Source of the DNA: Monocercomonoides exilis PA203
Lineage: Eukaryota; Protista; Preaxostyla
Assembly: GCA_001643675.2 (NCBI GenBank)
Contig: LSRY02000014.1
Coordinates: 620,001-684,000, forward strand
Length of the DNA stretch: 64,000 bases
Reading direction: 5' to 3'
Shown: piece by piece, positions 10,003-63,790 of the stretch
How the letters are laid out: the number at the start of each line of letters is the position of its first letter
Numbering within the stretch: position 1 is the stretch's first letter
Program-made: the position numbers and the translations under genes
Notes under the pieces: model-generated
Databases searched by the model: none
What the model was told of the DNA's origin: nothing
What the model saw: only the letters and a program-made list of their open reading frames with translations

Positions 10003-13000
10003 ATGATTATTGTTCTTTTCTATTTAATTCTCATGAGCTGCTCAACAGAAAGTCCAAAATCCGACTGTCAAGGTCAAAATTCAATAAAGACTGAAAACAT
10101 TGATTGCTTTGAAAAGCAAAGTCATGTGAATCCCTTTTTATCAAATAGCATTAAATATAAGTGCGGGATTGATGGATCTTCATTTGCAAAAGAGGTTGGA
10201 AAAACAAAAGGAAATTATCATCAAAAGTTGACTTATAGTCAGATAACTTCGTTGCTTGGCTTGACAAACACTTCACTGACAACGCAGAAGATTCATTTTG
10301 ATCAGAGCAGCGTTCATTCAATTATTGATGCTGGAAGGCAGTCGCTTGTTTTTATTGATCAATGTGCGATAGCCATTTCGTGCTGTTCTGAGTCAAATAT
10401 GTTCAGGAGCTCTGCCAGCACATTTCTCATCAAAAACTTGACACTTCTTTCATTGGTACCAATGGAATGTGTTTCTGCACTTGTTGGCCCTGGAAATCGG
10501 TTGCCCGTTGAAACTCAAGAAAATGATGTGAACATTCTTGAATCGTCATTTATGTCATTTACGCTGACTGAGATTCCATTTGTGTCATCTGTGCCTTCTT
10601 CGATAATAGCAATCGTTCATTCAGATTTTGTCAACGTGACTGCAACAGGACCAAGAGATTTTCGAACAGCTGGTGATAAGTGTTGTTGCTTGGCGATTAT
10701 TCACTCTTGCAGTTTCACAGAGGTGGATAATGTTCTGGATGGAGAAATAGTGAGTTCGATAAATGGACCATCTGCGATGGATGCATTTAACACTTCGTTC
10801 GCTCGTTGTAGGAAAACAGGAAATGACTTAAAGATTGAAGGAAACGTAACAATGAAGAAGCAAGATCTTGGAGAGAGAAATGACATTCTGCAATTCATTG
10901 CATGCGAATGGCACAACACTTCATCAGCCTTTACAAATGAATCAGTTTCTGATAGCAATACAGAATACTCTGGAGGGGCAATCGGAATTTATGGGGGAGA
11001 TAGTTGCTCAGTAATTGTTGAAGATTGCTTGTTCGACACATGTACTTGTCAGAGATATGGAGGAGCAATCATGGTATATTGTGGGAAGAGTGTTCAATGG
11101 AAAGGAAATGTGTTTGAAAAATGCAAATCACATAATTATGGTGGAATTACTCTGCTGTTTAATATCAAAAAATGCACATTTATTGAAGATTGCGTTTGCC
11201 GAAATACATCTGCGAGAGCGTATGGTGGCGGCTTAAGAATTCAAGCATGCCGCTCAACAGGCTGTGAAGAAGACGGACCAATTGTTAGCAGATGCTATTT
11301 TGATACATGCGAATGTGAAACCAGTGTTGGAGGTGCAATAATGTATTACGACTTATCATTCACAATGAAAACAAGCGAATGCACTTTCAAAAATTCAAAG
11401 GGATTTTTTGGAGGGGGTATTTATTTCAATATAACCAAGAAAGTGATTATAAATTACCAAATGATTGCCTTTTCTTTCTTTCACAATAACTTAGCGAATG
11501 GAAAAATGGGAAATGATGTTTTCATAAATGATAGCTTCTCTGTAATTGGGGAGAATTTCATTTTGTGTGTTTCTTCTTTTTCAACAAGAGCAGAAGGCAA
11601 CAGAGTGTATCACTCAGCACTTGGAGAAAAAAACAGTTGGCTTCCGAATGGGATACTGGAACGTTTTGTGAGAAAAGATGGGGTTGACAAAGATTTATGT
11701 GGCATTGATGAGGGTTCTGCGTGCCAGTCGATAGAATATGCAGTAGAGAGCTTTTCAGATTCTGGAGAACAGCGATTGAAGCTGCTGGAGAGTGTGTTTT
11801 CACCAAAAAGGGGAGTTTCTAGACCTTTGAGGGATATCGTTGTGAGAGGCGTTGCTCAGGAGCAGTGTGTGATCAAGACCGGAAATCTTCCTGGCCAGTT
11901 CTTGTTTGAAGTGTCGAGAGGATCGCTGTTGGGGTCGAATTTCAGTGTGGAGCATTCAGCAGCAAAGCAAGATATGACACTCTTTGCAGTGAGCTCAGTG
12001 GGAAAGATGAAACTGAACAGAATGAAGCTGTTTGCATCTGAAGATCATGAATCTGGTCTGCCATTCACATCCCCGCTGATTATATGCTCAGGAGATGGAA
12101 CACTGAATGTGGACGAGCTTCAGATAAGTGGATACTTCTTGAGTAATTGCTCTGTGTTTAATTCGCTGGTGGGAGGCATTGAGCTGAAGAATGTGATGGT
12201 TGAGAACCTCCAGAGGCTTCATGGAAACGGAAGTGTTGCCAGTGAGGTGGTTGGAAGCGGAAAAATGGTTGACCTGAACAATGTGTCACTGAACAATTGC
12301 AGCTGCCAAGAAGGAGACGGTGGGGGATTTTGTATTCGAGTGAAGAGAGGAGGTTCATTGAGGGTGGGGAACTGGAGCAAAACAGCTTTGAAACAGTGCA
12401 GTGTGGCAGACGAGGAAACAAAGAAAGGAAAAGGGGGAGGGATGATGATTTGTGTGGAAGATGGAGGAGGGGATATTATTCTTGGGGATGTGCAGTTCAG
12501 TGGATGCTCAGGTTGGTGGGGAAGGAATCTGTTTGTGGAGGCGAGGGAATTGTCGAGGGTTGTGAGCAGCACGAGTGTGTTGTTTGGCACAACAAAGATG
12601 GAAGACAAAGATATGATGGGAATGGAGGATGGATGCGGAGAAGAGGCTGTGCCACTGCTGGCATATTTTGCTGTGTTTAGAGGAAGTGGATATGTGGGAG
12701 GAAGTGGGATGAGGGACTTCAGTGGATGCGGAACCAAGGATTATCCCTGCCGCACAATTGGAAAAGCAGTTCGCTTGCGATTTGGAGAAGGAAAGAGAGC
12801 AATTGTGGTGCAAGAAGGGTTTGTGTGGAAGGAAGAGACGGTGATGGGAAATGAAGAGTGGGAGTTGAAAAGTGTGAGGGAAAGAACAGCTGTGCGAGTG
12901 GAGTGTCCAGAGATGCTCGGTGGGAAAGCAGTGATTGTGAGCCAAATGAAAACGTCAATGACAAACATTCGATTTCAGCTGGCTCCATTTCAGGGTTCAA

Positions 13001-16000
13001 GTGAGAAGGTGTATGTGGAGTGCCAAGCAGGGAGCATGCTATTGTCGTATTGTGAAGCAGAGATGGCAGAGAGTGGAGATGAGCTGATGAACACTTTTGC
13101 AAAGGCAAGTGGGGGACTGCTGAAATTTGTGAACTTCAAGATGAGAAACGTTGTCTTTGGAGATATTTCAGCGATTATTGGTGTTGAGAGTGAAGCTGGA
13201 ACAGAGCTGATGATGGAGAATTGCTTGTTTGATTCAGTGGAATTGGGCGGAGGATGTGCTGTGAGTGCGAGCAATGTGAATATGATGAATGCAACAAAAA
13301 GCAATTTCACAAGCATCACTCGTGCAACTGGAGATGGAGGAGGGATGAGTGTGGTCGCGCGTGGAGAGACTGGATTGCATTCTGCACTCATTGAAGAGTG
13401 CATGTTCAATGCTTGCTCAGTGAATGAAAATGGAAAGGGAGGAGGAGGGATGCACTTGCACATTGCAAAGGCGGGTGTTGTGAAAGTGAACAAGTGTTCA
13501 TTTTGCTTATGCACAGCAACAGCTGCACCTGGAAAGGGATTGGGGGGAGGGATTCTGATTGAGGTGGATGATGCTGATGCAAACTTTGTGGTTTCTTTGC
13601 CATCATTTGGCGAAGGCGGAGCGAATAGTGCAGAATATGGAAATGATCTGTTTATGGAATCACCAAATCTGACAGAGAGTGTGATTGAAGAAAGATTTCC
13701 ATTTGGAAAATCCATGCAGTTGTCTGAAGTGGATGGGATGAGAGGCTTTGATGGGGCTGATCGTCTGAATGCCATACCACTTGTGTTCTTGCTGCACAAT
13801 GTGGGAAGCACGATTTCCGCATCCTCGACGAATGGACTGGATGCGGCTGGATGCGGCTTTGTTGAGTATCCGTGCAGAACAGTGGGATATTCGTTCCAGA
13901 GGCAGAAGGAGCAAGAGAAAGATGTGGAGGTTGTGGGTACATTTGAGCTGAACGAGAGTGTTTCTTTGAGCCACGAGAAAGGGTGCTTTGTTCATGGAAA
14001 AAGTGAAATGAGCGAAGTGATTGTGCATGGAAGCGCCTCTGGTGAAACAGGGCTTCTGCATATGAAAGGAAATGTGCAGCCGAATTCTTGTGTGAAGCTG
14101 TTGTTATTTTCTGTTCCCGGATCTGTCCAGGAGCATGAGGCGCTTTTCAGCCAAGAAAGCAAGGGGACAATGAGAATTGAGAATTGCTCATTTCGATCTC
14201 AGAACGAAGGTGCAACACACACATTTTGTATTGTTGTTGCGAGCAATGGAAAGACAGAGCTGGCGTTTGTGACAGTTGACAATATGTGTTTTTCAGGGAG
14301 TCAACTGATGAGGATAGATGGAGCAGCAGCTGTGGATATTGCGAATATGAAATCTGTGAATGCCACAACCTCGTCCGAAACGGGATTGGTGTATGTCTGC
14401 GGAGCAGAAGCTCGACTGAATGTTATGAATTCTGTGTTTGATAATGAAGGGTCAGGAAAGGAATGCAGGATTATCAATTCATGTGGAGCCAAAGGTGTTA
14501 TATTGGAAGAATGTGTGCTTAAATCAGGAATCGTGAGAGGAAAGAACGGATCAGCTGTGTGTTGCGTTGTGGGTGAGGAACAAATATTGAAGATAGTTGG
14601 AGGAAACTTCGAGAGCTGTGAAAGCGCAGGGGGAAATGGAGGAGGAATATTTGTGAAAGTGAAGGCAGGAGGTTTGGCAGAGTTGGGAAGCACTTCATCT
14701 GTGCAGGCTATTGAGTGTTCAGATTGCCATGCAGAAAGTGTGGAGGATAGTGGAGGGCGTGGAGGAGGGATGTATTTATCTGTTGATGATGAGGTGAAAG
14801 CATTCTACATTCAGAATGCGGTGTTTGATGGATGCAGCGCAGCAAGAGGAGGGAATTGGGTGTTTGTGGAAGGCAAAGAGCTAAAGAGGATTGTGAATGG
14901 AACGACAATTGGATTTGAGTTTGAGAAGGCAGTTGAGATTGCGAGGTTGGATGATGTTGGAGGGTGTGAGTTGAGTGCAGTGGAGCAAGTGATCCCGCTG
15001 GCAGTGCTGTTTCGAGGGATGCCAGCTGTGGGATGTGTGGGTGGAAGTGGGATTGATTATGAAGTTTGCGGATTCAAAGATTTTGCATGCAAAACGATAG
15101 AACATGCGGGAAGTGTGCTTTTTGGGAAGAAGAATGCAACATTGAAGCTGCAGAGCTCATTCGTGTTTGAGAAAGATATTATTTTGGATGCACAACCGAT
15201 GGATATTTGCGGAGAAGCGAACGGCACTCTGATCAAAGTGAATGAGGATGAAAATGGGATCGGGAAAGGAATGATTGAAACACAGCAAGATATCAGGTTG
15301 CATGGAATGGTATTTCGGCTGCCGCAATCAGAAGGAGATGGAAGAGAAAAATGGATGATGTGTTGCAGTTCAATGAGTCTGACGATTGAAGAGTGCCACT
15401 TTGTGAATGAAAGTGGTGTTGTTGGGATGGGGATTGTGGCTGTTTCAGGAGGCAGAATGGAAATGACACATTGCAGAATTGAGGGGTGTGTGTTTGTGAA
15501 GGCAGGAGTTATATTGTTTGATGGAAATGAGGCTGAAGGAGTGCTGGATGGTGTTTATATGAGAAATGTGGGAGTCAGCGAAGAAGGGAGTGTTGTGAGA
15601 GCAAAGGCAGGAGGAAATATTGAGATTGCAAACAGCGAATTTCGAGAAAGAAATGAGACAGATGGAAATGTGATCAGAGTGGAAGGAGATATCAGCGTGG
15701 GGATGAGGAACAGCACATTTTCTGGGTTGAAGCGAGGAGCAGGAAATGGAGGAGCGATTGATGGAAAAGTTGGGGAAGCAGAGAGGGTGGAGATTGTGAA
15801 CTGCACATTGGAGCACAATGGATGTGATGCTGGAGGGTCACGAGGTGGAAGTGTGCTTGTGGAAGTGGATGATGGAGGGTATTTTGGATTTGATGAAAAC
15901 ACTGTGAACCGCAGTACAGTTCCATCGGGAAGTGGACTTGGAGGAGGGCTGTATGTGAACTTGTGGGGAACTGGATCAGAATACTCGATGAAGAAGATCG

Positions 16001-19000
16001 TGTTTGATGAGAACGGAGCATTGAAGGGGAAAGATGTGTTTGTGGAGTGCGTTCAACCTCGACTGATGATTGTTGGGGTGCTTTGGAATGGATCTGCGCA
16101 GAACGATACAGCAGAAGATCGGCTGTGGGTGCTTGATCGATTGTCAGAGACCACAGAGGGGGTGACGATGATGGAGTATCTGTTTCCGAGCTCGTCGCGA
16201 TTTGTGTTTGTGAATGGAAATGGGAGCAATTCGACACTGTGCGGGTATCGAGAGCTTCCATGTGAATCTGTTGATTTGGGATTTCAGCTGATGAACACCA
16301 CACATTCCATCATCCAGCTGCAAGCAACAACGCCAGTGAGTGGGCAGATTGATCGAGATGGGGACTCGTTGACCATCCAAGGAGACGAAAGCAAACCATC
16401 GCTTGCGATTGGGGGAGACGCGCAGTTTGTGCTGAGCGGTGGTGAGGCGCTGACACAACTTGTGTTTTCTGATGTGAAGTTTGACCTTTCAGGAGTGAAT
16501 GGAGGTGGAAGTGCTTTCGATTGTGTTGTGGAAGTGTGTGCTGGGCAATGCTCATTTGTTAGTGATATCTTTTGGAGTGGTGGAGAAGAAGGAAATGGAG
16601 CTTGTGAGAAGTGGATTGTTGTTGGAAAAGGGGGCACAGTCAGATTTGATGATTGCGAAGTGAGGAGTGTGAAGTTTATTGGAGAAAGAGGGATCATTCA
16701 GGCGAGAAGTGGGACTGTCATCCTGGCAAGAACACTAATTACAGGATGTTCAGGGAGAGAAGGAAGTGGCCTTGTTGTTGTGTGTGATGGAAGCAGTTGC
16801 ACAGCAGATGGATGCACTGTGAATAACTGCTGGTGCACAGGCGATGGAGGTGGATGGAAAATTGAAACAGGGGGGAGAATGAAGATAACGAATGGGAGCA
16901 CAATTTCTGGTTGCAAGTCAGTGGAAGGAAGGGGAGGAGGAGGGAGCTGTGTTGTGGGCTTGGGAGGAGAGTTAATAATGAAGGGGGTGCGAGTGGAGAG
17001 GTGTTCTGTGGATGAGGGGAAAGGGAGAGGTGGAGGAATATTTATTCAAGTTGAGGGAGCAGATGGAAAAGGGATGAATCTGAGGGAAGTGTGGTTTGGA
17101 GAGAACAAAGGAAAAGAAGGGAAAGATCTGTTTTTGGAATGTGTTGATTTGAACAACACTGCCACACAGGCATCGATTGCTATTGATTTGTTTGATGAAA
17201 ATGGAGTGAGAATTGCAGATATGGCTGGGGTGGATGAAGTGAACTTCAATGAGAGTGTTGATTTGATGTTGTTCCTTGTGGAGCGTCGAGCGAGTGTGGT
17301 GGTTGTGGACGGAGGAAAGGGAATTGATGTGAATGGATGTGGAAGCGAGGCTTTTCCTTGCAAATCGATCTGGAGTGGAGTGGGGCACTTTGACGATTCA
17401 GCCGAGAGATGCTTGCGGATTGTGAATGTTGGGAACATCGAAGACTGTTATGAGTTTCTGGAGGAAACAAGTTTTGTTGGAGTGACTGGAGGAGAACGAG
17501 AGAAAGTGACTTTGGAAATTCAAGGAAATCCAAAGAGAGATAGAGTGTTTGAAGCAGTATTGACAGCATGTGCAAGTCTGACAATTGGCGAGATTTCATT
17601 GGAATTGCCAAACAAAATGGAAAACGAATTGAAAGTGGCAATCATCTCAAAAGCAGGAACGCTAACTTTTGAAAGCTGTCAAATTGTGTGTGAAGCCGAA
17701 ATGAAGTTTGGAGTGATTGAAGCAAGCGGCAATGGAGTGGAATTGATAAATTGTCAGATGGAGTCTTCGAGTTTCTCGGTTGTTCCGTTCATTCTTCTTA
17801 CAAGAGCAGTGATTGAAGGATGCAACTTCACTGGAATCAAGACAGAAGTTGGAAAGAAAGGAGGAGTGGCTGAGATTGAAGTTGGAAGGGAAGGGAATGT
17901 TGGTGTGAATAGATCGCGGCTGATGAAGTGCGGATGCAGTGTTGAAGACGGAAAAGGGGGATTTGCTTTCCTGAATACCACAAACACAGATGAAAGTCCG
18001 CGATTTGTGTTTGAAGGACTGGTGTTTGATAAGAATGAAGCATGGTTGGGAAAGAATATGTTTATTGTTGATTGTGATCTCAACGAGTCAGTGAATCAGG
18101 ATGGATTCATATTCAATTATGGGAGTGGAGAAGGAGACACAGATGGGAACATGTTTGTGGGGAGTGATGGCAAGTTTGTTGAAACGGATTTGCTTAGATT
18201 TTTGGTTTCCTATGAGGGATGTGAAGTGTATGTGGGAAAAGAAGGTTTTGATGTGGCAAGGTGTGGAAGAAAAGAAGAGCCATGCAATTCGTTTTGGAAA
18301 GGGATGGAACAACTGAAAAGCGAAGGGGAATCTCGTTTCATGTTCGTTTCTGGAGAAACAGTTATTCGGGATGAGTATGATTTGGAAGAATTTGAAATGA
18401 AATCGGATGGGAAGAGAGACGAGTCAAAGAAGAGCAGAGTGGTATTTGAAAAGAAAGCAAGTGTGGGAGAATTGTGGTTTATCAGAAGTCATGGTGGGGT
18501 GCTTGTGGAAGATATATGCTTTGAGCAGGCAGAAGCGTTTGAAGATCACGTGAAAGCTCTTATTTGGAACGAAGGAGGTCTGTTGAACCTCAGCGACTGC
18601 TCATTTGTTTCAGCTGTGAAAGATAAGAGCGAGTTTTCCTGCTCGCTTGTGTTTGCAAAGCAAGGGGTGCTGATTGTGCAGTTGTTCAGGATGGAGTCGA
18701 GGAGCATTGGCAACAGTGTGTTCACTGTTGGGGATGAGACCACATGTGTGATTGAGAAAGCAACTATTTCCGGAGTGAACATGAATTGTGATGCAATTGT
18801 GAAGATTGTTGGAGAGGAACATGCACTTGGAAGATTCGAAACAAATCTTGTTGGAAGCGTTGAACTCAAGGATTGCATTCTGGATGGCGTTCAAGGAAGG
18901 AGCGATCGGTGCAGCATCATGCGAACAGACACAGGAAAGGGAGTGATGATGAAGGTGAATGGAAGCGTTGCAAGCGACTGTAGAGCAAAGCAAAGCTTGC

Positions 19001-22000
19001 GAGGAGGAGTTATGGAGCTGTGGATTAATGGAGGTGGAAGGATGAACATGGTGAACAGCAGTGTTGTTCGGTGCAGCTGTTCAGACACCGGCAAGGGAGG
19101 AGGGGTGTATGTGGGGAGCAACGAGACAGGAATGTTGGATTTTGAGTTCAGGACGATGGTGTTTGTGGCGAATACAGCAGGGGTTGGGTGTGATATTTTT
19201 GTTCAGTGTTTCAGCATATCGTCGCAGATCAATGAAACGCAATTTCGATTTGACCTCAGGAAGATCTCGGATCAAGAAAAAGGGATTTGTGGGATAGACA
19301 GCACAGAGCACAAGACAGACACGAATCTTCTGGATTTCATCACTGTATATCTTTCGGATACAATATATGTTTGCTCAGAGCGATCCAGCGGAGGGAAGAA
19401 TGATCGCCAATGCGGTGCGCCCTTGCTTCCGTGTGCCACGATTGATTATGCGTTGGATCATTTGACAGGGGAATATGTGAGTGAAATGTATGTTGTGGAG
19501 CAGGCAAATCTCGAAGGTGAAGCGGAGCTGAATGAGATGGAACTCTCATCGCGACTGAGAAATCCATGTGTTGTTAATGTTGGCGCATCCATCAATGGAA
19601 CAAGCGACTGCATTATTCAGACAACCAACAATGTTGCCATAAGTCGAGTGTGCTTTGGGTATTGTTCGACTTCAAGCGATTCGCACTCGTCATTCCTATG
19701 TGTGAAGAGTGGTCTTTCAACATTGGGCAGTTGCTCATTTCGAAGCAGCTCAATGATTTCAGAAAGAGTTTTTGTTGGATATCACATTATTCGAGTGGTC
19801 GACGGAGGTTGCTTGCTGGAACGATGCTCTGTGTCTGAATTGCATCTCACAGTGAGCGCTATCAATGGGGAATCTGATTCAATCAGCATTATTTCGAGTG
19901 TGTTCAGAGATGTTTCATTTGAAGAGCCTGTCATATCATTAACATCAAAAGTGTTGTTGGAATCGAAGGATGAAAAAAGGATATCGCTGCTTCAAAGTGT
20001 GAGGGTTGAAAATATCACTCAGCAAAGTGATAAAGTGCCGTTGGAATTCAGTGAGTTAATTCATCAATTGGAGCTGTCAAATTGCTCAGTGAGCATCGCC
20101 ATCACTAAAGGGAATGGTTCTTGCGCAATGGATATCAATAAATGCACAAGCGCTTCAATGGATTTGTGTTTGTTTGATGGGTTGAGAAACAAAGATGGAA
20201 AAGAGAAGGATGAAAACACTGACCTGGAGGGAATATGCAAATGGAATGAGTCGCTGATTCGTCTGAGTGATTCAAATGTAATGATGAAGGATACGAGTGT
20301 CGTTAACTCTTCCATTGGTGGTCTTTCTATTTGTGGAGGAAGCGTGACAATAGAAGCAGGGAATTTCACGAACAACAACCCATCAATTGAAGGATATCCA
20401 TCACTGAGAAGAAATATCATTTGCTCAGATTCAGGGGTGTTGAATGTGATGAGTTTGAAAGGAGGAGATGGATGGAAGGATAATTCTTCACTTTGGATAT
20501 TGAATGAAGGATGCGAGTTGAGCGGGATGATGGAGGAGAGAGCATCACCACTATTCATCCCAGTTGTGGAAGAGGCGAGGAATGAGACGGCATCTGAGGG
20601 AAGAACAATCATCACGCTGAGTGGGAGACTTCTTCTGCCATGTGATGTTTGGTTGAAGTTGAGCTTCAGGAATGGAAGGGAAGAGGTGGTTGAGAGCTAT
20701 GGGATTGGAGAAAAGGAAAGTGTGTCAGAGAACGAAATTGTTGCAGTTGTTTCATCGGTTCAGATGGGAGCAGTGGGAGCAGAGACAGAAGTGAGTGTGA
20801 GTCTTCTGTTTGGAAAGATTGATTCGCCTTCATCGACTGATTCGTTTATCCTGAAGAACAGAAGCGAAACCGAAGGAAAAGGAGATGGCAGAATTGTTGA
20901 AGGAGGGAAAGAAGGAAAATTCTCATGGGCATTAATTGTGTGCATTGCGATTGTAGTAATACTGTTAATTATATCCATTATATTCATTGTCCGGTGGAAG
21001 AAGGTGAAGAATGAAGCAGAAGATCTCAGAGAGATTGTGAATGATAATATCAGAAAAGATCCGAAGGCATTTGAGATGGTGACGATGGAGATGTCTCCAG
21101 AGGAGCAGTGGAGGAGAGTGGCAGGGGATGTCGAGAAGAAGAACGATGAGAGGATCAAAAAGAGGGTGTATGAGAAAAGCTTGGGACACTCAGAGTCATC
21201 AGAGCATTTGCTGAGTGAGAGTGGCTCCACTGAATATATTCTTGGAAGAGACTCTGACAAGATTCCAGAATGGGCATTGGAGAAGGTTGAGGAAGAAGAG
21301 ATAAGAAAGAGATCACCATCGCCATCAATGTCTTCGACATGTTCAACTGATTCAGATTCAACATTTGTTCGCATGGAAGATGCTTGTCCAACCACATCAT
21401 CGATGTCGAATCTGGTGGATGCTATGGCATGCTCGTCTCCACATGAAAAATTGATTGTGGATCTGAGGGATTCATTGTTCATGCTGCTTCATGGAAGGAA
21501 TGAGAAGAAGGAAATGGCAATTGGGAGTCTTCAGGAAAGAGAGCAAACAGCTGCACAGATCCTGTTCTGGGTGGCCAATCTGGCACTCCATTCATTTGAT
21601 GAAATGGAGAATCCTCTCTCATCTCTCACCAATCTCAGTCCCCACATTGTGTTATTTTCCGAGCACATGGTGATCTGCATTGCCTTGCACTCTGATTGTT
21701 CATCTTCAGATGATTCAGAGTCATCGTCAATCTCTTCATTAACTGTTGTTTCTTCGTCCTCCAATATTTCGGTGATGAGTGAGAGATTCACAAACTCGCC
21801 TCCGCCTTCGTCTGCCTTTGAGGATGATGATGATCTCAGGAAGGAGTGCTTGCGGTGGAAGGCGCCTGAGCTGCTGATGAGCAAGAAGATGGGAGCAACA
21901 AAGGAATCAGTTGTGTTCTCGATTGGGATAATGCTGTGGGAGTGTCTGACGCTGGAGATCCCGTTTGGGGAGTATGCCGCAGAGGTGGCGGGGCAGAAGA

Positions 22001-22239: not shown

Positions 22240-22706
22240 GAAGATGTGGATTGGAAGTTGGCAAGCAGGAGAGCAGAGGAGCAGGAGAGCAATGAAAATG
22301 AGACAATGAAGACAATGTTAGGTGTTCTTGCCATTCACAACAACATCCTCTCCAAAAATAGTGCATGTTGATGCATTAGGCAGGAGGAATGCAAAAGGAG
22401 GATGATTGAAAGGGAAATGGCTGTTGGAGCAGAAGCCTTTGAGAGGAATGGGCATGGTGAAAGGAGGAGAGATGAAGTGATGCACCTCTTCAAAAAAAGA
22501 GTCAGAATGAAAAGATGAGCTGGATTTGCTTGAAGGAAGCGAGCCAACATTGTGGAATGGAGTTGTGGAACGGGGTTGAGGAGAGTTTTATTTTTCTGTC
22601 AGATTTTCAACACCAATTATTTTATTGTTTATTTATTTTTCGTTTTTGTTTGCTTTTCAAAGTTTGTTGTGAAGCAGCATGATTTGCGAGTTGTGCTGCC
22701 TGTTTG
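20395..22706 (+). repeat. Left arm (2312 bp) of a near-perfect inverted repeat
   Basis: Reverse complement of 23612-25922. The ORF track gives identical translations in both arms (e.g. 21531..22334- and 23984..24787+). Confidence 0.97.
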
Positions 22707-23611: not shown

Positions 23612-25922
23612 CAAACAGGCAGCACAACTCGCAAATCATGCTGCTTCACAACAAACTTTGAAAAGCAAACAAAAACGAAAAATAAATAAACAATAAAATA
23701 ATTGGTGTTGAAAATCTGACAGAAAAATAAAACTCTCCTCAACCCCGTTCCACAACTCCATTCCACAATGTTGGCTCGCTTCCTTCAAGCAAATCCAGCT
23801 CATCTTTTCATTCTGACTCTTTTTTTGAAGAGGTGCATCACTTCATCTCTCCTCCTTTCACCATGCCCATTCCTCTCAAAGGCTTCTGCTCCAACAGCCA
23901 TTTCCCTTTCAATCATCCTCCTTTTGCATTCCTCCTGCCTAATGCATCAACATGCACTATTTTTGGAGAGGATGTTGTTGTGAATGGCAAGAACACCTAA
24001 CATTGTCTTCATTGTCTCATTTTCATTGCTCTCCTGCTCCTCTGCTCTCCTGCTTGCCAACTTCCAATCCACATCTTCTCACTCCTCCGACTCGCTCATC
24101 ATGCTTCTGTTCAGCCCAGCCACGGACTCTTCCAGAACACAGATCGCGTCTGTCATCGTCATGATTGCTGCCCCTTTCGGAAACCGCACAATAAACTCCC
24201 GCTTCAGCTCGTTCACACTCGGCCGCTGCCCCCAGTCTTGCGACAGGCACCCCTTCACCACACCCGCCAAGCTGCTCCCTCCCACCTTGCTTACATCCGG
24301 CTTCTCCCCATTCACAATCTTCTGCCCCGCCACCTCTGCGGCATACTCCCCAAACGGGATCTCCAGCGTCAGACACTCCCACAGCATTATCCCAATCGAG
24401 AACACAACTGATTCCTTTGTTGCTCCCATCTTCTTGCTCATCAGCAGCTCAGGCGCCTTCCACCGCAAGCACTCCTTCCTGAGATCATCATCATCCTCAA
24501 AGGCAGACGAAGGCGGAGGCGAGTTTGTGAATCTCTCACTCATCACCGAAATATTGGAGGACGAAGAAACAACAGTTAATGAAGAGATTGACGATGACTC
24601 TGAATCATCTGAAGATGAACAATCAGAGTGCAAGGCAATGCAGATCACCATGTGCTCGGAAAATAACACAATGTGGGGACTGAGATTGGTGAGAGATGAG
24701 AGAGGATTCTCCATTTCATCAAATGAATGGAGTGCCAGATTGGCCACCCAGAACAGGATCTGTGCAGCTGTTTGCTCTCTTTCCTGAAGACTCCCAATTG
24801 CCATTTCCTTCTTCTCATTCCTTCCATGAAGCAGCATGAACAATGAATCCCTCAGATCCACAATCAATTTTTCATGTGGAGACGAGCATGCCATAGCATC
24901 CACCAGATTCGACATCGATGATGTGGTTGGACAAGCATCTTCCATGCGAACAAATGTTGAATCTGAATCAGTTGAACATGTCGAAGACATTGATGGCGAT
25001 GGTGATCTCTTTCTTATCTCTTCTTCCTCAACCTTCTCCAATGCCCATTCTGGAATCTTGTCAGAGTCTCTTCCAAGAATATATTCAGTGGAGCCACTCT
25101 CACTCAGCAAATGCTCTGATGACTCTGAGTGTCCCAAGCTTTTCTCATACACCCTCTTTTGATCCTCTCATCGTTCTTCTTCTCGACATCCCCTGCCACT
25201 CTCCTCCACTGCTCCTCTGGAGACATCTCCATCGTCACCATCTCAAATGCCTTCGGATCTTTTCTGATATTATCATTCACAATCTCTCTGAGATCTTCTG
25301 CTTCATTCTTCACCTTCTTCCACCGGACAATGAATATAATGGATATAATTAACAGTATTACTACAATCGCAATGCACACAATTAATGCCCATGAGAATTT
25401 TCCTTCTTTCCCTCCTTCAACAATTCTGCCATCTCCTTTTCCTTCGGTTTCGCTTCTGTTCTTCAGGATAAACGAATCAGTCGATGAAGGCGAATCAATC
25501 TTTCCAAACAGAAGACTCACACTCACTTCTGTCTCTGCTCCCACTGCTCCCATCTGAACCGATGAAACAACTGCAACAATTTCGTTCTCTGACACACTTT
25601 CCTTTTCTCCAATCCCATAGCTCTCAACCACCTCTTCCCTTCCATTCCTGAAGCTCAACTTCAACCAAACATCACATGGCAGAAGAAGTCTCCCACTCAG
25701 CGTGATGATTGTTCTTCCCTCAGATGCCGTCTCATTCCTCGCCTCTTCCACAACTGGGATGAATAGTGGTGATGCTCTCTCCTCCATCATCCCGCTCAAC
25801 TCGCATCCTTCATTCAATATCCAAAGTGAAGAATTATCCTTCCATCCATCTCCTCCTTTCAAACTCATCACATTCAACACCCCTGAATCTGAGCAAATGA
25901 TATTTCTTCTCAGTGATGGATA
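23612..25922 (-). repeat. Right arm (2311 bp) of the inverted repeat; 905-bp spacer at 22707-23611
   Basis: Coordinate sums are 46318 (inner end) and 46317 (outer end), consistent with one 1-bp deletion (T4 at 25157-25160 versus A5 at 21157-21161). Confidence 0.97.
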
Positions 25923-28900
25923 ATTTGATATCAAGGGATTGTTGTCAATGAACTCTCCTTTCTCAATTATCGCATTTCCTCCACTAATTGCAAGTCCACC
26001 ATCATGTGAATTCGAGATAGTTGAATCTTTCATCATCACAAAACTCTCCTTCACCTCAACAACTGATCCATTCCATTTGCATATCTCATTTTTGTTGCCA
26101 TTTCCATTTGCTTTTTCATCCATATTTCTAATCTTCACAGACTCTCTTTCGTTTGTGTTGCCATCAAAAATGCAGCTCTCAATCACAGTGCTTTCACTCT
26201 CCTTCACAGAAATACATTTTCCCTTTCCTTCTCCATTTGCAGCAAGTGTATTTCTCAATGAACAATTTGTCAGCTGTGTCATCTTTTTCATTTTCAAACA
26301 TGATATCAACGATGCCCCATCGTCAGACGACGTAATGTTTGCTGCATTCATTTTTTCTATTGTCAACTGCTCTCCTTCAACTGCGTCAATAAGGTTTGTT
26401 CCCATCCTGAGATCAAAAAAGTCACACGAAATTAAGGAAAGGATTGCAGATTGAAGCATACAGACAGCCGAATCAGACAGTGAAAGATCTGACACCACAC
26501 AGCCCTCAAGCATGCATTCACCTCTCTCAATTCGCACAATGCAAAATAATAAATCCGCTTGCACATGTTCTCCAATTCCCTCTGTGATTTTGGTGCTGAA
26601 TGTGCAGTTTGCCACTTCCAGCAATCCTCCTTCAGGGAAAAGAAGAATAGAATGAAGTGAAGCAAACTCCGGCTCAAACACAAACTTCAGTCTTGACATT
26701 GACACAGCGCCTGTTGTTTCTATCAGAGCCTCTCGGGAACATTCGATCGCAGGACACACTTCCACAACGCACAATCCTCGACCTCTCGAACTCAGACTCA
26801 TCTCTTCCAGCTGCAGCTCCCCATTGATCACACTTGCTCCATCTGCAAACACAAGGCTCATGAACTCTGAAGTCAGGTGCATCAGCCCATAATCAATCGA
26901 ATAGCACGGAAGAGTGTACGTACCACACTGGCGCTCATTCGACCCATTCATGCTCGACACAATAATCGTATCGCTCTGATGGATTGTGATGAAATCGATC
27001 AAGTTTGTATCTCCAGTGTGCTCAGTCACATCTATTCCATATATCGCATTCAGCTGAACATAATACTTCTCTCTCAGATCGAAATGAAATTGCGTTTCAT
27101 TAATCTGGCTCGTGATGTTGTAGCACTCAACAAAAATATCATTCCCCACACCTGCTGTGTTTGCACTCCAATTCATCTTCTCAAACACAAAATTCAGCCT
27201 TCCTGTTTCTCTGCTCCTCAAATACACTCCTCCTCCTTTCCCACTCTCGCTGCAACAGCACCGACTTATCGTCGACTTCGAAATACGCAATGCCCCTGAC
27301 CCACTCAACACAAATAGCATCACTCCGCCTTTCTCGCTTGCTTCTGCTTTGTTGTCCACAAACAAACTGTCCTCAATCCTCAACTCAATCCCGCTCTCTC
27401 CTTTCATCTCACACACACTTGCCCCATCATCGCTTCTTTTCATTCCAACAAACGAGCAATTCTCAATCAAAATATCGCACATTTCTTTCCCACTGTTCGT
27501 GCACATTTGCTCTTCAGTTTCCTTCACTGTGAAAACACATCCTTCTGTTTCATTCAGAGATGTGCAATCGACACTCGCCATGGTGCAAGCAACGCCAACT
27601 TCATTGATCACAAAAACACTGCATCCCACGCTGCTGGAGTCCATCGACAAATCTTTCACAACCAGTTCTCCTGCATCCATCGCCACAAACACGCATCTGC
27701 TTGGAGTGCTTTGCTGAGCATCTGAACGAAACGAGCATCCAGTCATTTCAAACTTCCCAGCTCTATTTACAACTGCAGTTCTGCAAACACCATCAACTCC
27801 AGTTCTCGAGTGAAGTGCAATGCCTGTGAACGAAAGTGACTTGTGATTCACCAAATAGCAATCCAGTCCATCTTCAACTGCCTTCTCCAAAAACAGCACA
27901 GCCTTTTCATTTTCTTCACCCATTGTCTCTGCTTTTTTAAACCGACAGTTGGACACATTGAAAGAATCTTGAATGATAGTTGATCCTTCAATTTGAATTG
28001 CTTTCATTTCATTTCCCTCCATCATGTTTTTCACCCCTTTCCACAGTGTTCTGCATGGCTCTTCCTTGCTTCCACACCTCGTCACATCAAATCCATCCGA
28101 TGAGATAAATATCTCAAATGAGCTGTACGGAATCAGAAACATGAACAAATCTTTATCTGAATGAATGTTGTCGCTCCCAACAAACAGCAATCTATCTTCC
28201 TTCATCGACTCATAATCAAATCTGAATGTATCTACCCTCACTGTGCTGTTCAAATCAGCCGCCAAAATAAACACATTCTTTCCAATATCTGCTCTGTTCT
28301 TGTCAAACTTCACACCAACATCCATGAGCAAAGGCATGCCGTTGTTGCCGCTGCTGCATTTCTGGCAATTCAAAAACAAAAACCCTCCTCTGCTGCGATC
28401 ACCAGATAGCGAGCAGATAGATGCATCAATATCCTTGATCGCAACATATTCTTCTTCTTTCAAAATCACATTCATCACACCACCTTCATTGCTCTCAGTA
28501 TTCTCTATTTGAGAGAAGTTGCAGCGTTCAATCTCCAGCGAAGATGAAACAATAAACGGTGAAATGGCAAACAGGCAACATTGCAATGAGCACCTAATCA
28601 TCGAGCATGTTCCACTCGTTGCTTTCACAAGCGAGTATTCAACTGCATCTGCCACCATCACAGCAAAAATGCAATTCTCAAATCGAAGCTTTCCACTTGA
28701 CAAGATCAATGATGCCAATTTCTCCTCAAACAACGAAGGAATCTCAAGCTTCAGCGAAAGCAAACTGAGTGAGTTGCTCGAAGCAATCACTGAAGTCATG
28801 CCATTCCCTGTTATTGAGCTGGAAAAGTGGATGAGCTTCCATTTCACCTCTTCCTCTTTATTCACATGGCAATCAAAAGCCATCTCTTCATCAAACATAA

Positions 28901-31900
28901 AGCAATCTTCAATTCTGTTTTCATCCATCACAACAAGTCTCTTTTCAAGTCCAGCTTCATTCCCGCCAATATGTGCAATACCACTCCACACAGAACAGCA
29001 AGGAAAAATCTCGCTTCCACACCCAGCTGCATCATATCCCTCTGAAGATACAAACACTTCCTCCGCCTTTCTTTCAACAAGAAACAACCGAAGATCCACA
29101 CTTTCTTCAAACCAATCTCGATCCCTTCCTTTCATATCAACCAACACTCCTTCTTCATCCTCATACTCAAATCCAAACCTCGCACTTGTCACCGTTTCGT
29201 TCAGTTTCTTGCATGAGACAAACAAATCCTTTCCTTCAAACGCTTGGTTGCCTTTGAATCGCAATTCTGAAAATCTGATGTTGTTCTCGCTGTCATCCAG
29301 CACATCCAAATACACTCCTCCTCCTCTTCCTTCATTTTTATCAGCTGCACATTTCATAAAAGATACAGCTTCAACTTTTATTTGCTCATTCATTCCCAAT
29401 TCGCATCTGATGCATCCGCCTTGCATGCTTTCAGTTTGAATATCTTCAAAAGAGCTCTCTTCATTGATGCTCAATTTGGCTCCTTTTTTCGATACCAAGC
29501 ATGAGCTCAACCCCACAACGCATTTCGTAACCGTTGTGTTCTTCAAAGACGCTTCAGATCCTGCTTCATTCATAACAAGCCCAACACCGTTCGTGTGCAT
29601 ATTATCGATCGTGCAGTTTTCAAAACCTGTGCTTCCATCCTTGCACATTGCAATCCCACTTCCTGCAAAATGCACTCCTTTCATCACATCCCTGTCAAAA
29701 TGAACAAATCCTCCTTTCGCAGCAACTATCCATTTCCCACATTCATTCGACGCACTTCCACAGCCAGAAAATGTGCAGCCAACAAAAGTGCATTGTCCCA
29801 CCCTCACTTCCACAACTGATTGTTCTTCTGCCAGATTCATCGGTGCTCGCGGAAGAACAAACTCAAGAACTGAAAAAATCAAATATGTCAATGCCTCTCC
29901 CTCTGTTTGCTCAAATTTTCCTTCCTCTCCAACAACCATTTTCTGTGCCTCATCATTCCCTTGCATCGTCAGTGATTTTCCATTTCTATTGATTGTCCCA
30001 TTCACTTCTGCCTCCCCTTCCAGCTGCATGATCACATGCTCATCTTTCATCCGAGCAAACCCCACATCAACTGACAAGCACGGGTTTTCCTTCAATCCAC
30101 AGTTCTGCCCGTCGTTCCCTGTTCCATCCACAAACATATATGATCCCAAAGATGGGAACAAATAGCTTATGATAGACCTTTCCTTGCTGGCGTCAGAAAG
30201 CTCTTCAACCCACATCAGCTTCTGAACTGTCGCGTTCGTGGCTGTCCCATACCACAATGTCGGAAGAAGCATCAGCCACGGCGACTCACACACCAAATAC
30301 ACATCATCTCCCTTTTCTGCCACACTGTTTCTGAACTCATTGTTTTTCATCGAATATGTGATGTTCGTGCTCTCAAACCTCACATACAGCCCTCCTCCCT
30401 TTCCACTTCCAGATGGCACAGTGCACTTGTCCATCTTATTGCGCTCATACACAAACCTCCCTCCTTCTCTCACAATCATCACTATTCCTCCTCCCATTGA
30501 ACCATCTGCCTCACAACAACACTTCTCAAAAGTGCAGTTTGTAATCTCAATGCATTCTCCATTCCTCACATCCCCATTCATCACTCCCCCATTTCCATTA
30601 TTCCTCGTTATCTCCAAAAATGTGTTGTTCTTCATCATCAGGCTCATTCCATATCCCTCCTCTCCATTTCCAATCACAATAATATTTCCATCAGCAAAGT
30701 CTGTCTCTTTTAGCGTTGAGTTTGCAATCACTGCTTCCTTCCCTCGCTTCAACTCAACCACACTCCCTCCTCCTTCCCTTGTTGCATTCCAAATTGTCAC
30801 TTCATCAATCAGACCTTCCACACCAACACCATCAATCACAATCATCCCTTTTCCAAGTGTCTCAAAGTTCCCGAATTCACATTTCACCATCTCAATCTTT
30901 CCTCCTCTGCAACAAACACATGTTGCCTCAACTATCCCTTCTTTGGTTGCAAATGAACATCCTTCAATTCTCAAAACATTGCCATTGCACAGAAACACAC
31001 TGTTCTTCATCGATTCTGCAAACCTTGAAACAACAAATGCCAAATTGAAAAACTTCACATTTTGCATTGTTTCAATCGTGCTTTCCTTTTCCTCCTCTCC
31101 TCCTCCTGATCCATCCACAACAACTCGTTGCATCTGCATCTCTCCGTCAATTGTCATTGCCTGCGAATCAATTACAATTTCTTCTTCAATTGAGAAAGAA
31201 GAAATGAGACGCAGCACTGCCAATGATGTGCCAAACAAGGCTTTCCCTGCATATTTCAGTGTGCTGCACGGAAAATCAAAATACCCGCATTTTGTGTGAT
31301 CCATTCCTCCATTTCTTCCATAAATATATCCAACTGTGGGTTTTTCGCGAAACAGCACCACAAGCGGAATCAGCTGACCAACACTTCCATTTTCCATTCC
31401 CATCAACTCCTTCAAATCCGGATTCTTGTCAACATCAACCTCAAACGAAAAATTGAACGATGTTTCATTCACAAGCTCTGACAAGCTCTCACACTCTATC
31501 ATCACATTCTTGCCTCCAAAACTTGCTGAATTGGCTGCCTCTTCCGTTCCAAAAGTCAACTTCGTCATCACAAAATCTCTTCCTCCTTCTTCACACCTTA
31601 GCATCACTCCCCCTCCATAACCCCCAACTGATCCTTCGCCAATGGCTGAACACTTCCCAAAATATGTCTCACACTCCACAATTCCCAGCCTCATCACTCC
31701 TGTTCCTTTCAGCACCACGCTTATTCCTCCTCCGCATCCCTTTGATGCTCTACAGCCTTCAATCTCAACATCATAAACACTCATCCTGCACTCATCTCCA
31801 ATCACTCCATTCACAACACTTCCATTCCCTTCCAATTCATTCACACCCTGAAATGAGCTGTTTGTAATCGAAAGATCCCTTCCTTCTCTGTCACAAATGA

Positions 31901-34900
31901 ATCCGCAATTTTTGTTTCCACAGCTTTGTACTGTCACATTAGCCAGCGAAAGTGAATTCTCAGATGCATACTCAATTAGACCATTTGCGTCCATCATCTG
32001 CACATCGCTGATAAAGACATTATTTATCAATGCTTTTCCATTTCCTTTCAGGCACAGTATGGGAGCTGATGCAAACTGCACAGCTTCTATCCTCAACCCT
32101 GCAACAGAAAGACTTCCACTTTGAAGGCGAATGAACGAATAATTGCACTGAATCACAGAAAGCTCGCACTCAATTGCACATTCTTCAATTTGCAGCTCTC
32201 CACCAGCTCCTGATACTTGAAACACACTTGTTTGAGCAGATGGAAGCGATCCAGGAAGAATGTGAACAAACAGCTCAAACTTGACTCTCGAAAGCACTTC
32301 AATCATGCATATACTGCCAGTCTCGTTCCCCTTCATTTCCATCCTCGTTCTCGTTGCAACCCCACAAAACTCGTATCCTTCACTTTCGTTCAGTATCACA
32401 CTCTCTGAAAATGAATACGTTTCTCCAAATCGCACTTTTCTTTCTTTCCCCATCACTCTCTTCAATGCATAATCAACTGTTTGGCACCTGAACTCTTCAA
32501 ATCCACAAACAACAACATCCACCCCACTGTTGCTCATGAACATCCACTCAGGATCGTCTGCAAGGTAATATTTCAATGGAATGATCAAATCTCCCCACTT
32601 TGAGTCAATTCCCATCGCCAAAGAGCTGAGATCAGAAATGTGAATTGGAAATTGAATCTGTTCTTTTCTCACACTTGTTGCCAAATCTGGAGATTGCACA
32701 AACAGATCTGCTCCATGCTCTGCCTCGTTCAATCTGAAAACAAGTGTTTCTGATAGCTCAAATCTTGCCTCAGCATCCAAAAGATGAAGCAGCATCCCTC
32801 CTCCTCTCCCATTCGTTCCACTTCCTGAGGGTGCGCTACATGCTTCAAGCTTCGTCGATGAAACATACAACTCGCTCGCCTTTTCCAGCACTGCGTGCAT
32901 TCCTCCTCCCCCATTGCCATTTCCAGACACTCCGCATCCTTTCAATGAGCAGTTCTCTATATCAACAACAAATCTGCTTGCTTCGTCTGCTTGCAAAGAA
33001 ATGCTTGCACCATCCCCATCTGTTCTCGTGATGTTTTCAAATGATGTGTTCTTCAGCTCCAACAACGAGCACACCTCAATGTGAATCATCCCACTCTTCT
33101 CCAAAGCACAATCTCCAAATGAACAATTCTGAATTGATACTGAATTGCTTGTGGCCATTCTGATCACTCCTCCACTCCCGCTTGCTCTCACATTGTTCAT
33201 TGTCAATAGATCAATTGTGCATTTCGCACTTCCATCCACAAGCACCATGTAACTTTCAAACAACACCTCTCTCTCAGCCCCACATCTCAGCCTCAGCATC
33301 TGCATATACCCACCGCTCGCTCTGGCAAATATATACCCAATCGTATTTGCATTGTCCATCCCATCAATCGCACAGTCAATAATTCTCATGTCTCCGGCCA
33401 ACGAATATACAAATGTGGAACGCCCTGAAATCGATTGCCCCAGCTCAAAGGTGATGTTTGTGAGTGTTGTAGTAACATTGTTTTTCACCAACCAGTCGTG
33501 CTCTTTTGGTTCTATTGTCTCCACTCTCAATCCAATAGCTTTGTCACTCGAATCTATTTCATATGACTGCTCGCTCAAAGTTATTTCCTCCACAAATCCA
33601 AATGTGTTCACAAGCCTCACAACTCGTTTCGATTCTGGAAACCGATGCTCTGCAGCTTTTTCAATCGTTTGGCATGGATAATCAGCATAACCGCACAACC
33701 TTAAATCATTTCCATTTGCTTTTCCACTCACATATGCAGGTGGCTGAAAAGCTCGCAGAAACAAGGCAAGCGGAATAATAATCTCAGGATTGCCTCTTTC
33801 AATACCGCTCAACTCACCGAAGTTTGTCGAGTTGATTCCAATTTGGGGACGAAATCCAAGTGATGCATTGCTGATGACCTTCGACAGGCTCTGCGCTTCC
33901 ACAAATACATTCTTTCCTCTCCAGGCATCACATCCAACAAAGGCACAAAGCTCAATCCTGAAACTGCATTCGTTGCTCAGGCATGCCAGATGCATCGCCC
34001 CTCCTTTCCCTTTTTTTGTTTCATCAGCAGGTGATGAACATGACTCAAACATCACATTTGAATTGCCTCCAATTCGCAATTCGCTTCCTGTTTGCATCGA
34101 AAAGTGAATCCCTCCCCCATTGCCATTTGCACAAGAGCACATTTTCAGCGTTGTGTTTGACAAGCCAAAAGAACTTCCAGAATCTAATGAACTGGAGAAA
34201 ATAGATCCACTTCCAGTGGCTCTTGTGATGTTCTCAAAGGTCACATTCACTATTCTTGGAGAATTTCTCGAAGATAGTTCAACTTCACTGAAGATTGGCA
34301 CTGAAAGAACCATATTCCGAATCTCCACATTTTCCAGCGAAATGCAATGCATGTTCGACATGAATGGGGATGCATCTATTTCGCTTCCTCCTGATTCAGA
34401 GCCTGGAGATAAAATGAGAACATCAGACAAAGAAAGCACTCCCGCAGAAGAGCTCACCACAAAAAGTCGTGGAGATGGATGTGCTGCTGAATCATGTTGT
34501 ATTTGAATTGCTGTTATCATCAAACTCCCACTCGATACGCTGAATAAAACTGAAGATGCTTCCAAGGATTGTGTTCGAACAATTGAATTAAGATGGCTTT
34601 CTCCAGAAACTTCAATGTGCTTTTCTCCACAGTCAATCGAAGCACGTGGAGCAAATATGGAAGCTAACACCTCCACTCCTTGTGTCGTGGCATATCCTGA
34701 ATTTCTCACAGCTCTTTCAATCGTTTTGCAAGGTTTGTCTTCCGATTCCCCACAAAGCAACTCAGCATCATTTCCATTGCTGGAAACATAACGCTTCAGC
34801 AACCCCAGCCCAAGCCAGGAATCATAATCTGTTCCACTGCCGTTGAACCAAACTCTTTGCTTTTCTGTGGTCGAGTACGATAATTCAAATGGACAGTCAA

Positions 34901-36514
34901 TCAAATTCGGATAAACAATGTAAACATCATGTCCATTTCCATTTCCTGCAGTGTTTCCATCAAAAAAGCAATATGCCATAAAAACAAAACGCTCTCCTAG
35001 TTGCATGCTTTTGTACTGATATATTATAAAAGCCCCACCATCACATCCCGCTATATTCCTCTGAAACGCAGATTCTTTCAAAAGAAATGAAGTTTCAAGT
35101 TCGTATTCCACTAATAAGGCTCCCGCTAAAGATCCTGCCTTGTTTTGCGTGAATGTACATTTGTCAACAATGAATGGATCAACTTTCTTTCCATCTTTCC
35201 CAAAAATCTTCACCAACCTCACTGCACCAGCGTAATAGTTGCTGGAATTGCATCTATCAAAAAGGCAACCGAATAGAAGAACTGATCCTTCAGATGTATT
35301 ATAGCATTGAACAGCTCCAACACCGTTTGAAGTTGAATAGCATTGAGAAAAATTAGATAGCTCAATGTTCATTTTCATGATTCCATCTGTGTAAATAGCA
35401 CCGCCATGAGGTGCAGAACAGCTATATCAAAAAATCATTTCGTTTGACATTAAAGTGAAAAAAAAAACGTTATAAAATTATAATTTTTAAAAGAAAAAAT
35501 GTAAATTGATATTCAAACAAACCTATTAAATTTACATCTTTGAACAATAAAAGATACAAGAATGTACAATGATTTCATTCCGCCACCATAATCTGGGGAA
35601 ATACATCCATCAAATGTGTCGTCTTCAAATGTTTCTGATTGGGTCAGAACTTGGTGTCCTGATTCTCCTGAATAGTGTGCATTAGCGTTTGCATTTCTGA
35701 TGCATCGTTGATATGTGTTGTTGGATGAAAACAGTGCTGTGCCTGCAGTGTTTATTGATCGAACAATGCCTCCATAAAAGACATCGCAAACTTCACAGAA
35801 CGAGCATCCTGAAATCGAATTCAAACTCTCTGAAAAAGAAGAAGGAATTTTGATTGTTTGTGCTGAAGCGATCGACATGTTGCAAAATGAAGATCTTGCC
35901 AAATTCACATCTTCTTTTCCTGACGAAGAAAGAAATGGAGAAGAGAGCAGTTGCAGAGACGAAAAAGCAGAATTGGATACACTCACTCTGTTTGATGTTT
36001 CGTGTGTTAAAAACGCTTCAGTTGGATGGGAAACCATCAACGAAGGAATGCCGTTTTCAGCAGTAGATGTTGTGAGTGAAATGTTCACACAACACAAACA
36101 ACCACTTGTTTGCAGGAACGGAGGAATACAATTTTTGGTTGAATATTTCATCGAACAGTGGCTGATAGACACTGAAGATTCATTGATGAAAAACACTGAA
36201 CTGTGCTCTTTTGCGCATATCTCCGCATTCCATGCTGAAAGTGTGGAATTCATTATGAGCATGCTCGCATCAATTCTGGTCGAACTCCCATAGCACTGAC
36301 CTTGCCTCTCATCATTGTTCCTCGCATCCCCAGGTGGGTTGTCGTTATTCGGCAGCATCTGCAAATAAACAGGTGGAATTAAAAGATGCATATTTGATCC
36401 TTCACTCATTTTCTCGCTCTGCTTTGACCAGAAATTATCCGCTATTCCTCCACATAATGCCATATTGACAGCAAAAGACAGAAGTACAGCAAACAAACAA
36501 TTTGATGCTTGCAT
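24079..36514 (-). CDS. Giant receptor B, paralog of A (~4111 aa if the frameshift is corrected). Exons 36514-35523 and 35421-24079; a 1-bp frameshift near 25157 gives a stop at 25104.
   Basis: ATG at 36514 with signal-like MQASNCLFAVLLSFAVNMALC. A 101-bp GTTTGT...ATAG intron (35522-35422) joins ORF 35513..36523 in frame to ORF 25104..35378, creating FNSCSAPHGGAIYTDG. Eight Cys motifs are colinear with gene A. ORF 24079..25152 is the same pseudokinase as in A. Confidence 0.88.
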
Positions 36515-52144: not shown

Positions 52145-52204
<60 letters not shown>

Positions 52205-63753: not shown

Positions 63754-63790
63754 GTTTGAAGTTCTATCGTTAATAATATTTGGGTAATTC

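What the first reader, a model, noticed from the sequence alone, without database searches (positions are those of the whole stretch)
10003..36514. Palindromic pair of giant receptors: divergent 'variable' ectodomains joined to an identical 2.3-kb 'constant' module
Seen: two ~12.3-kb paralogs sit tail-to-tail, almost symmetrically about ~23160. Their ectodomains are colinear but heavily diverged. Identity then switches abruptly to essentially 100% at the Y codon of YPSLRRNIIC (20395/25922). It stays so through ~175 aa of membrane-proximal ectodomain, the TM, the cytoplasmic domain and ~470 bp of 3' flank, including synonymous and non-coding sites, and stops abruptly at 22706/23612. Selection on protein cannot explain identity at silent and UTR sites. 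Inference: an old inverted duplication is being homogenised by arm-to-arm gene conversion across the 905-bp spacer, or the family shuffles ectodomains onto a shared signalling cassette by recombination. Either would be a variable/constant receptor diversification system in a protist.
Basis: partly seen in the sequence, partly recalled or inferred. Interest (0 to 1): 0.85.

Follow-up and report, generated by a model that had tools for sequence, protein, structure and literature searches.

The report
Neighbouring receptor genes share converted tails
Two unrelated-looking giant surface-receptor genes of the gut protist Monocercomonoides exilis lie tail to tail and have identical rear ends because one copy overwrote the other wherever they were still alike; this known process (gene conversion) runs through the whole gene family and is not a switch that makes new receptors.

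Summary
Arms 20395-22706 and 25922-23612 are identical except for one A in a homopolymer, probably a Nanopore error, while the ectodomains are 37% identical (dS about 1.8). The genome is Monocercomonoides exilis; both genes belong to its largest family, beta-helix receptors with a dead TKL kinase remnant. The pair is not an old inverted duplicate: A and B come from different ectodomain subfamilies, each with 96-97% sisters elsewhere on the contig. Ectodomain and tail trees conflict (AU p<1e-43). The 3' end of the arm sits exactly where two family-wide flank types split. The 5' end lies in a patchwork zone of about 250 bp, so the Y codon is not a signal. A second close convergent pair is also homogenised; two distant pairs are not. 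Genome-wide, tails of unlike ectodomains are more alike on the same contig (80% vs 71%). Ectodomains are under purifying selection; the 'constant' tail is the mosaic part. Verdict: homology-limited ectopic gene conversion, a known process for which I found no paper on this family; nothing shows programmed diversification. The scan already reported this pattern on other DNA of this genome.

The parts
10003..22239 (+). Gene A: 4078-aa receptor-like protein, alpha-type beta-helix ectodomain, TM, TKL pseudokinase remnant
24079..36514 (-). Gene B (MONOS_13579fu16253): beta-type ectodomain, same tail; intron 35524-35424; 1-bp frameshift near 25160 in the assembly
20395..22706 (+). Left arm: last 175 aa of ectodomain, TM, cytoplasmic tail, 467 bp of 3' flank
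23612..25922 (-). Right arm, identical to left except A5 to A4 at about 25160
20225..20460 (+). Patchwork zone where ectodomain types begin to exchange short blocks; contains the 5' tract end
20920..20994 (+). Transmembrane helix of A (aa 3640-3664)
   Evidence: hydrophobic stretch read from sequence
21460..22180 (+). Kinase-like remnant: only the C-terminal helices match TK/TKL kinases; no GxGxxG, HRD or DFG
22707..23300 (+). Spacer part 1: A-type 3' flank, shared with paralogs L003, L017, L007, L008
23303..23611 (-). Spacer part 2: B-type 3' flank, shared with paralogs L005, L006, L009, L004

Best explanation
Two members of different ectodomain subfamilies of the M. exilis giant beta-helix/TKL-pseudokinase receptor family came to lie tail to tail 0.9 kb apart (inferred: a deletion or rearrangement joined their flanks at about 23300). 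Their tails were still about 85-90% alike, as all tails on this contig are. Recombinational repair between the facing arms then copied one over the other across the whole homologous stretch, and recently. The tract stops where homology stops. This is the extreme local case of family-wide ectopic gene conversion that swaps 100-300-bp patches among tails, mostly between neighbours on a chromosome. The ectodomain types are too diverged to take part. Shown: identity, tract ends at homology limits, tree conflict, mosaicism, same-contig bias. Inferred: the repair mechanism (intrachromatid hairpin or sister-chromatid), its direction, and whether it took one long tract or many short ones. The proteins most likely work as surface recognition or adhesion receptors with a non-catalytic scaffold tail (inference from fold).
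For: dS 0 in arm vs about 1.8 in ectodomains. Trees: (A,B) and (L013,L003) are clades at 100/100 in the tail tree but rejected in the ectodomain tree (p-AU 3e-44, 7e-57); ectodomain clades are rejected in the tail tree (3e-64, 9e-78). The 3' end falls exactly where A-type and B-type flanks split in 9 loci. The 5' zone is a block patchwork. Four-gamete incompatibility rises with distance, 0.39 to 0.65; 0 of 2000 permutations as low. Identical tracts of 250-300 bp occur between distant paralogs. The second close pair (446-bp spacer) is identical for 1551 bp, and 97% beyond a retroelement insertion with clustered differences mostly found in third paralogs. Convergent pairs 15 and 23 kb apart are only 88-90%. 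For unlike ectodomains, tail aa identity is 80.2% on the same contig vs 71.4% on other contigs, 0 of 1000 permutations; 77.8 vs 71.3 without this contig. 43 alleles are private to A and B among the 18 loci aligned.
Against: No spanning long read was seen; only Logan contigs could be laid. Non-reciprocal transfer cannot be shown from one genome. Distance dependence rests on 2 close vs 2 distant pairs of unlike ectodomain type. Near-identical whole-gene inverted pairs 11-88 kb apart also exist, so recent inverted duplication operates too. The protein set was chosen by similarity to A's tail, and contig identity was taken from contig length.
Confidence: 0.8

Rival explanations
1. Assembly artefact: Canu correction or Pilon polishing made two similar arms identical.
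For: The assembly is Canu + Nanopolish + ten rounds of Pilon (PMC8767320). No record spans the locus (21).
Against: Equally close paralogs (85-92%) were not homogenised. The arms carry 43 private alleles. All 5 differences inside three twin-arm pairs are 1-bp homopolymer indels, and frameshifts occur only in loci with an identical twin (L002, L020), as expected if Illumina reads could not be assigned to truly identical arms (inference). A zero-difference Illumina-type contig at 21705-21840 has depth 63.8 vs about 37 in the spacer, and both arm-spacer junctions appear in contigs. All 23 listed variants that I could check are alleles of assembled paralogs. The L013 protein is identical in NCBI and EukProt, which probably holds the older 454 models.
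Confidence: 0.07
2. One recent fold-back or inverted duplication of A's rear end replaced B's own rear end, with no ongoing conversion.
For: Zero substitutions means very recent. Whole-gene inverted twins are common in this family (12, 23, 54).
Against: Both arm ends are homologous, in-register junctions: B keeps its own flank type from the exact base where the types split, and keeps its frame at the 5' end. A fold-back should leave a non-homologous junction. A single homologous replacement is itself gene conversion.
Confidence: 0.07
3. Programmed variable/constant diversification: ectodomain cassettes are switched onto a shared signalling module at a defined site, or the spacer inverts as a switch.
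For: At least 31 ectodomain types on one tail type among 107 proteins. The tree conflict is real.
Against: Breakpoints are scattered. Each gene carries its own tail. Within a type the ectodomain is under purifying selection and less diverged than the tail. Flipping the spacer between identical arms would change neither protein. No joint with a change of strand was listed in the contigs, though contigs drop rare variants.
Confidence: 0.04
4. An old inverted duplicate whose tails are kept identical by selection.
For: The tail is the family's most conserved part at protein level.
Against: Identity covers silent sites and 467 bp of flank. Other paralogs' tails differ at dS 0.2-0.4. A and B are not sisters.
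Confidence: 0.02

Closest known systems
M. exilis 'protein tyrosine kinase' (TKL) family (PMC6759080, PMC8767320)
   Same: Same organism and family: PF07714 hit, 373 MONOS homologs found, gene B is MONOS_13579fu16253. The papers call it the largest family (320 of 332 TKL) and note its overlap with unclassified repeats.
   Different: In the passages I read, neither paper describes the beta-helix ectodomain, loss of catalytic motifs, inverted pairing or gene conversion ('inverted' has 0 hits in PMC8767320).
Regional gene conversion in clustered protocadherins (fugu, zebrafish; PMC1852091)
   Same: Neighbouring receptor paralogs have divergent distal ectodomains and nearly 100% identical membrane-proximal parts, including silent sites, differing between subclusters.
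   Different: Protocadherins are tandem and also share true spliced constant exons. Here each gene has its own tail, the strongest cases are inverted, and the tract runs into the 3' flank.
Conversion between adjacent inverted paralogs in Caenorhabditis (hsp16-48, hsp70; PMC3966223)
   Same: Inverted neighbours under 1 kb apart; frequency falls with distance.
   Different: Those are whole-gene near-twins. Here partners are from long-diverged subfamilies and only the tail converts.
Entamoeba histolytica transmembrane kinases (PMC2880585)
   Same: Expanded family of single-pass receptor kinases in an anaerobic gut protist, with near-identical and broken members.
   Different: EhTMKB1-9 is an active kinase. 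The M. exilis tail lacks the catalytic motifs. No homology between the families was tested.
Programmed diversification (V(D)J, lamprey VLR, trypanosome VSG switching); from my own knowledge
   Same: Many recognition domains, one tail type.
   Different: No signal sequence, no single expression site, no evidence of somatic change.

Membership tests
Ectopic gene conversion / regional concerted evolution | Identity at silent and non-coding sites between otherwise diverged paralogs | tested here: met
Ectopic gene conversion / regional concerted evolution | Region-specific phylogenetic conflict | tested here: met
   AU p<1e-43 in both directions
Ectopic gene conversion / regional concerted evolution | Tract bounded by homologous, in-register junctions at the limits of homology | tested here: met
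Ectopic gene conversion / regional concerted evolution | Mosaic of short tracts among paralogs | tested here: met
Ectopic gene conversion / regional concerted evolution | Stronger between near neighbours | tested here: inconclusive
   Same-contig bias is strong; the spacer-length effect rests on 2 vs 2 pairs
Ectopic gene conversion / regional concerted evolution | Non-reciprocal transfer seen between generations or alleles | not testable with these tools
   One strain's genome; contigs only
M. exilis PTK/TKL family | PF07714-type domain and homology to annotated MONOS members | tested here: met
Active protein kinase | GxGxxG, HRD and DFG motifs and a bilobed fold | tested here: not met
   HRD 0/114, DFG 1/114, GxGxxG 1/114 tails; only about 95 C-lobe residues align; the rest of the model is low confidence
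Programmed variable/constant diversification | Fixed breakpoint or recombination signal | tested here: not met
Programmed variable/constant diversification | One shared constant module with silent variable cassettes | tested here: not met
   Each locus examined has its own tail; short or broken models exist but were not shown to be cassettes
Programmed variable/constant diversification | Diversifying selection on the variable part | tested here: not met
   dN/dS 0.17-0.37 in the proximal 1.25 kb of ectodomain; distal 9 kb not tested
Programmed variable/constant diversification | Rearrangement within a clone; both spacer orientations | not testable with these tools
   Only contigs available
Fold-back palindromic duplication | Non-homologous junction at an arm end | tested here: not met
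   Both ends are homologous junctions

The most novel reading that the evidence does not exclude
Tail-to-tail pairing and conversion are an actively maintained system: they are frequent enough to act within lineages, and they keep hundreds of different beta-helix sensors wired to locally matched pseudokinase tails (for example for heterodimer compatibility), giving a protist a combinatorial recognition repertoire.
Probability: 0.08. Interest if true: 0.75.

Novelty: new member of a known kind. Interest (0 to 1): 0.36.

Why it matters
It is an unusually clean natural case of conversion limited by homology, with both tract ends explained, in a eukaryote whose recombination is little studied. It also changes how the largest M. 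exilis family should be read. The 'tyrosine kinases' are dead-kinase beta-helix receptors. Kinase-domain trees report chromosomal neighbourhood, not ancestry. Frameshifts inside twin arms are probably polishing errors. The close and distant pairs give a direct test of conversion rate against distance.

Tried and rejected
Exact look-up of the window's ORFs found no record, and no 454-era model of the arm turned up. All listed homologs were M. exilis, so no other species was compared; both searches are length-limited and list only the best 120. Ectodomain DNA searches missed known close sisters, so their counts are lower bounds. A paper search for an RHD/RHCE analogy returned nothing, so it is not cited. 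For alignment only, one script joined the two fetched halves of the interrupted paralog L013/L017 without its insertion. Rejected: selection alone, an old duplicate pair, a site-specific breakpoint, fold-back chimeric reads (they cannot give different ectodomains).

Full report
Observation. Gene A is a single ORF at 10003-22239 (+). Gene B lies at 36514-24079 (-) in three pieces. The annotated protein MONOS_13579fu16253 maps to it at 100%, with an intron at 35524-35424, and ends at a frameshift stop near 25104. Base-by-base alignment shows identity from 20395/25922 to 22706/23612 with no substitution and one missing A in a five-A run of B. The arm holds 175 aa of ectodomain, the TM, the tail and 467 bp of flank; the spacer is 905 bp. 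The ectodomains are 37% identical with dS about 1.8.

Organism and family. The genome has 82.3 Mb in 101 contigs, as in the M. exilis Nanopore assembly (PMC8767320), and all listed homologs are MONOS proteins. The family is the published 'tyrosine kinase' family, the largest in the genome (PMC6759080). A model of the 500 aa around the breakpoint (pLDDT 84) is mostly short strands; its best fold matches are beta-helix tailspikes and lyases (E 2e-4 and weaker), with weak FN3/Ig-like matches to a small domain. Relatives hit Pfam Beta_helix. In the tail only about 95 C-lobe residues match kinases, and HRD, DFG and GxGxxG are absent from essentially all 114 tails. It is a pseudokinase remnant. Recognition or adhesion with a scaffold tail is inference.

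Not an old duplicate pair. The 17 best matches to the arm all lie on this contig. Upstream of the arm they fall into distinct ectodomain types about 60% alike in DNA. A has three sisters at 96-97% (L005, L009, L011), and B has one at 96% (L013). Yet A's tail is 85-89% like its sisters' tails and 100% like B's. Trees of the two regions conflict: (A,B) is a 100/100 clade for the tail and rejected for the ectodomain (p-AU 3e-44), and the ectodomain clades are rejected for the tail (3e-64, 9e-78). The spacer is two family flank types joined at about 23300: 22707-23300 is shared with L003, L017, L007 and L008, and 23611-23303 with L005, L006, L009 and L004. So two pre-existing, different genes were brought together (the event is inferred).

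Tract ends follow homology. All nine loci aligned share sequence up to the base at 22706 and then split into the two flank types. At the 5' side, similarity among 31 ectodomain types climbs from about 25% to 40-70% starting 60 aa before the Y, and blocks of variants are shuffled among types from about -170 bp onward. In the second pair the tract starts 158 bp further upstream. The Y codon is the end of the latest tract, not a signal.

It recurs. A second convergent pair at C8:550-561 kb joins beta- and gamma-type ectodomains. It is identical over 1551 bp next to a 446-bp spacer, and 97% identical beyond an insertion carrying reverse transcriptase and tyrosine recombinase ORFs. The differences are clustered and mostly match third paralogs. 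Convergent pairs 15 and 23 kb apart are only 88-90% alike. Among 14 tails, incompatibility between sites rises from 0.39 under 20 bp to 0.65 at 400-800 bp, with 0 of 2000 permutations as low, and distant paralogs share identical runs of 250-300 bp. Among 107 annotated proteins, pairs with unlike ectodomains have tails 80.2% identical on one contig and 71.4% across contigs (0 of 1000 permutations), and the effect remains without this contig. Many whole-gene inverted near-twins also exist.

Variable and constant are the wrong way round. Within an ectodomain type, dS is 0.07-0.11 upstream and 0.23-0.41 in A's tail comparisons, with dN/dS about 0.2 upstream. The ectodomains are conserved lineages cut off from exchange; the tail is the mosaic.

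Artefact check. No record spans the locus, so this is not closed. But the arms share 43 alleles absent from 16 other loci. A zero-difference contig inside the arm has about 1.7 times the spacer's depth, both arm-spacer junctions appear, and the 23 contig variants I could check are alleles of assembled paralogs. All five differences inside three twin-arm pairs are 1-bp homopolymer indels, and frameshifts occur only in loci with a twin. This fits truly identical arms that short-read polishing could not resolve, so B is probably intact (inference). RNA runs hold the sequence, but contigs do not prove transcription.

Comparison and verdict. It works like regional conversion in clustered protocadherins (PMC1852091) and conversion between adjacent inverted paralogs in Caenorhabditis (PMC3966223). 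It fails the tests for a programmed system that I could run. I found no paper describing it in this family. Earlier scan notes report the same pattern elsewhere in this genome; my reading was written before I saw them, and they are not independent evidence. Limits: no more genome DNA could be fetched, no other species was compared, and gene B was searched in pieces with no joined model. New member of a known kind; interest 0.36.

Noticed in passing
window 41743-42813 (+): 356-aa ORF with ISXO2-like (IS1595/Merlin-type) transposase domain, Pfam E 3e-19; no flanking terminal repeats found.
   Followed up: partly
window 2048-3068: 1021-bp element with 230-bp terminal inverted repeats, 99% complementary; MITE-like.
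   Followed up: no
window 1350-1580, 61097-61344, 63786-64000: Family of about 240-bp AT-rich palindromic elements, 70-81% alike; MITE-like.
   Followed up: no
window 44953-49233 (+): 1426-aa ORF with C2, CEP76 peptidase-like and CEP76_C domains; CEP76/CC2D2A-like.
   Followed up: no
L013:2912-4373 and L017:1-1495 (G000:C8 about 551.8-556.4 kb): About 4.6-kb insertion inside a paralog's tail, with reverse transcriptase (E 1e-8) and tyrosine recombinase (E 2e-5) ORFs; DIRS-like, with short inverted-repeat ends. Only its two ends were seen.
   Followed up: partly
L020/L021 (G000:C5 1.010-1.037 Mb); also C10, C47, C55, C9, C63, C36, C51: Many inverted pairs of this family with equal or near-equal match scores, 0.5-88 kb apart; L020/L021 are 99.9% identical over all 4.6 kb held. 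Inverted pairing may be the family's main layout.
   Followed up: partly
L002, L020, L003/L017: Residual 1-bp homopolymer indels occur inside identical twin arms, so some annotated truncations in this family may be polishing errors.
   Followed up: partly
window 50588-54686 (+): Two long low-complexity ORFs (568 and 874 aa) with no convincing Pfam match.
   Followed up: no
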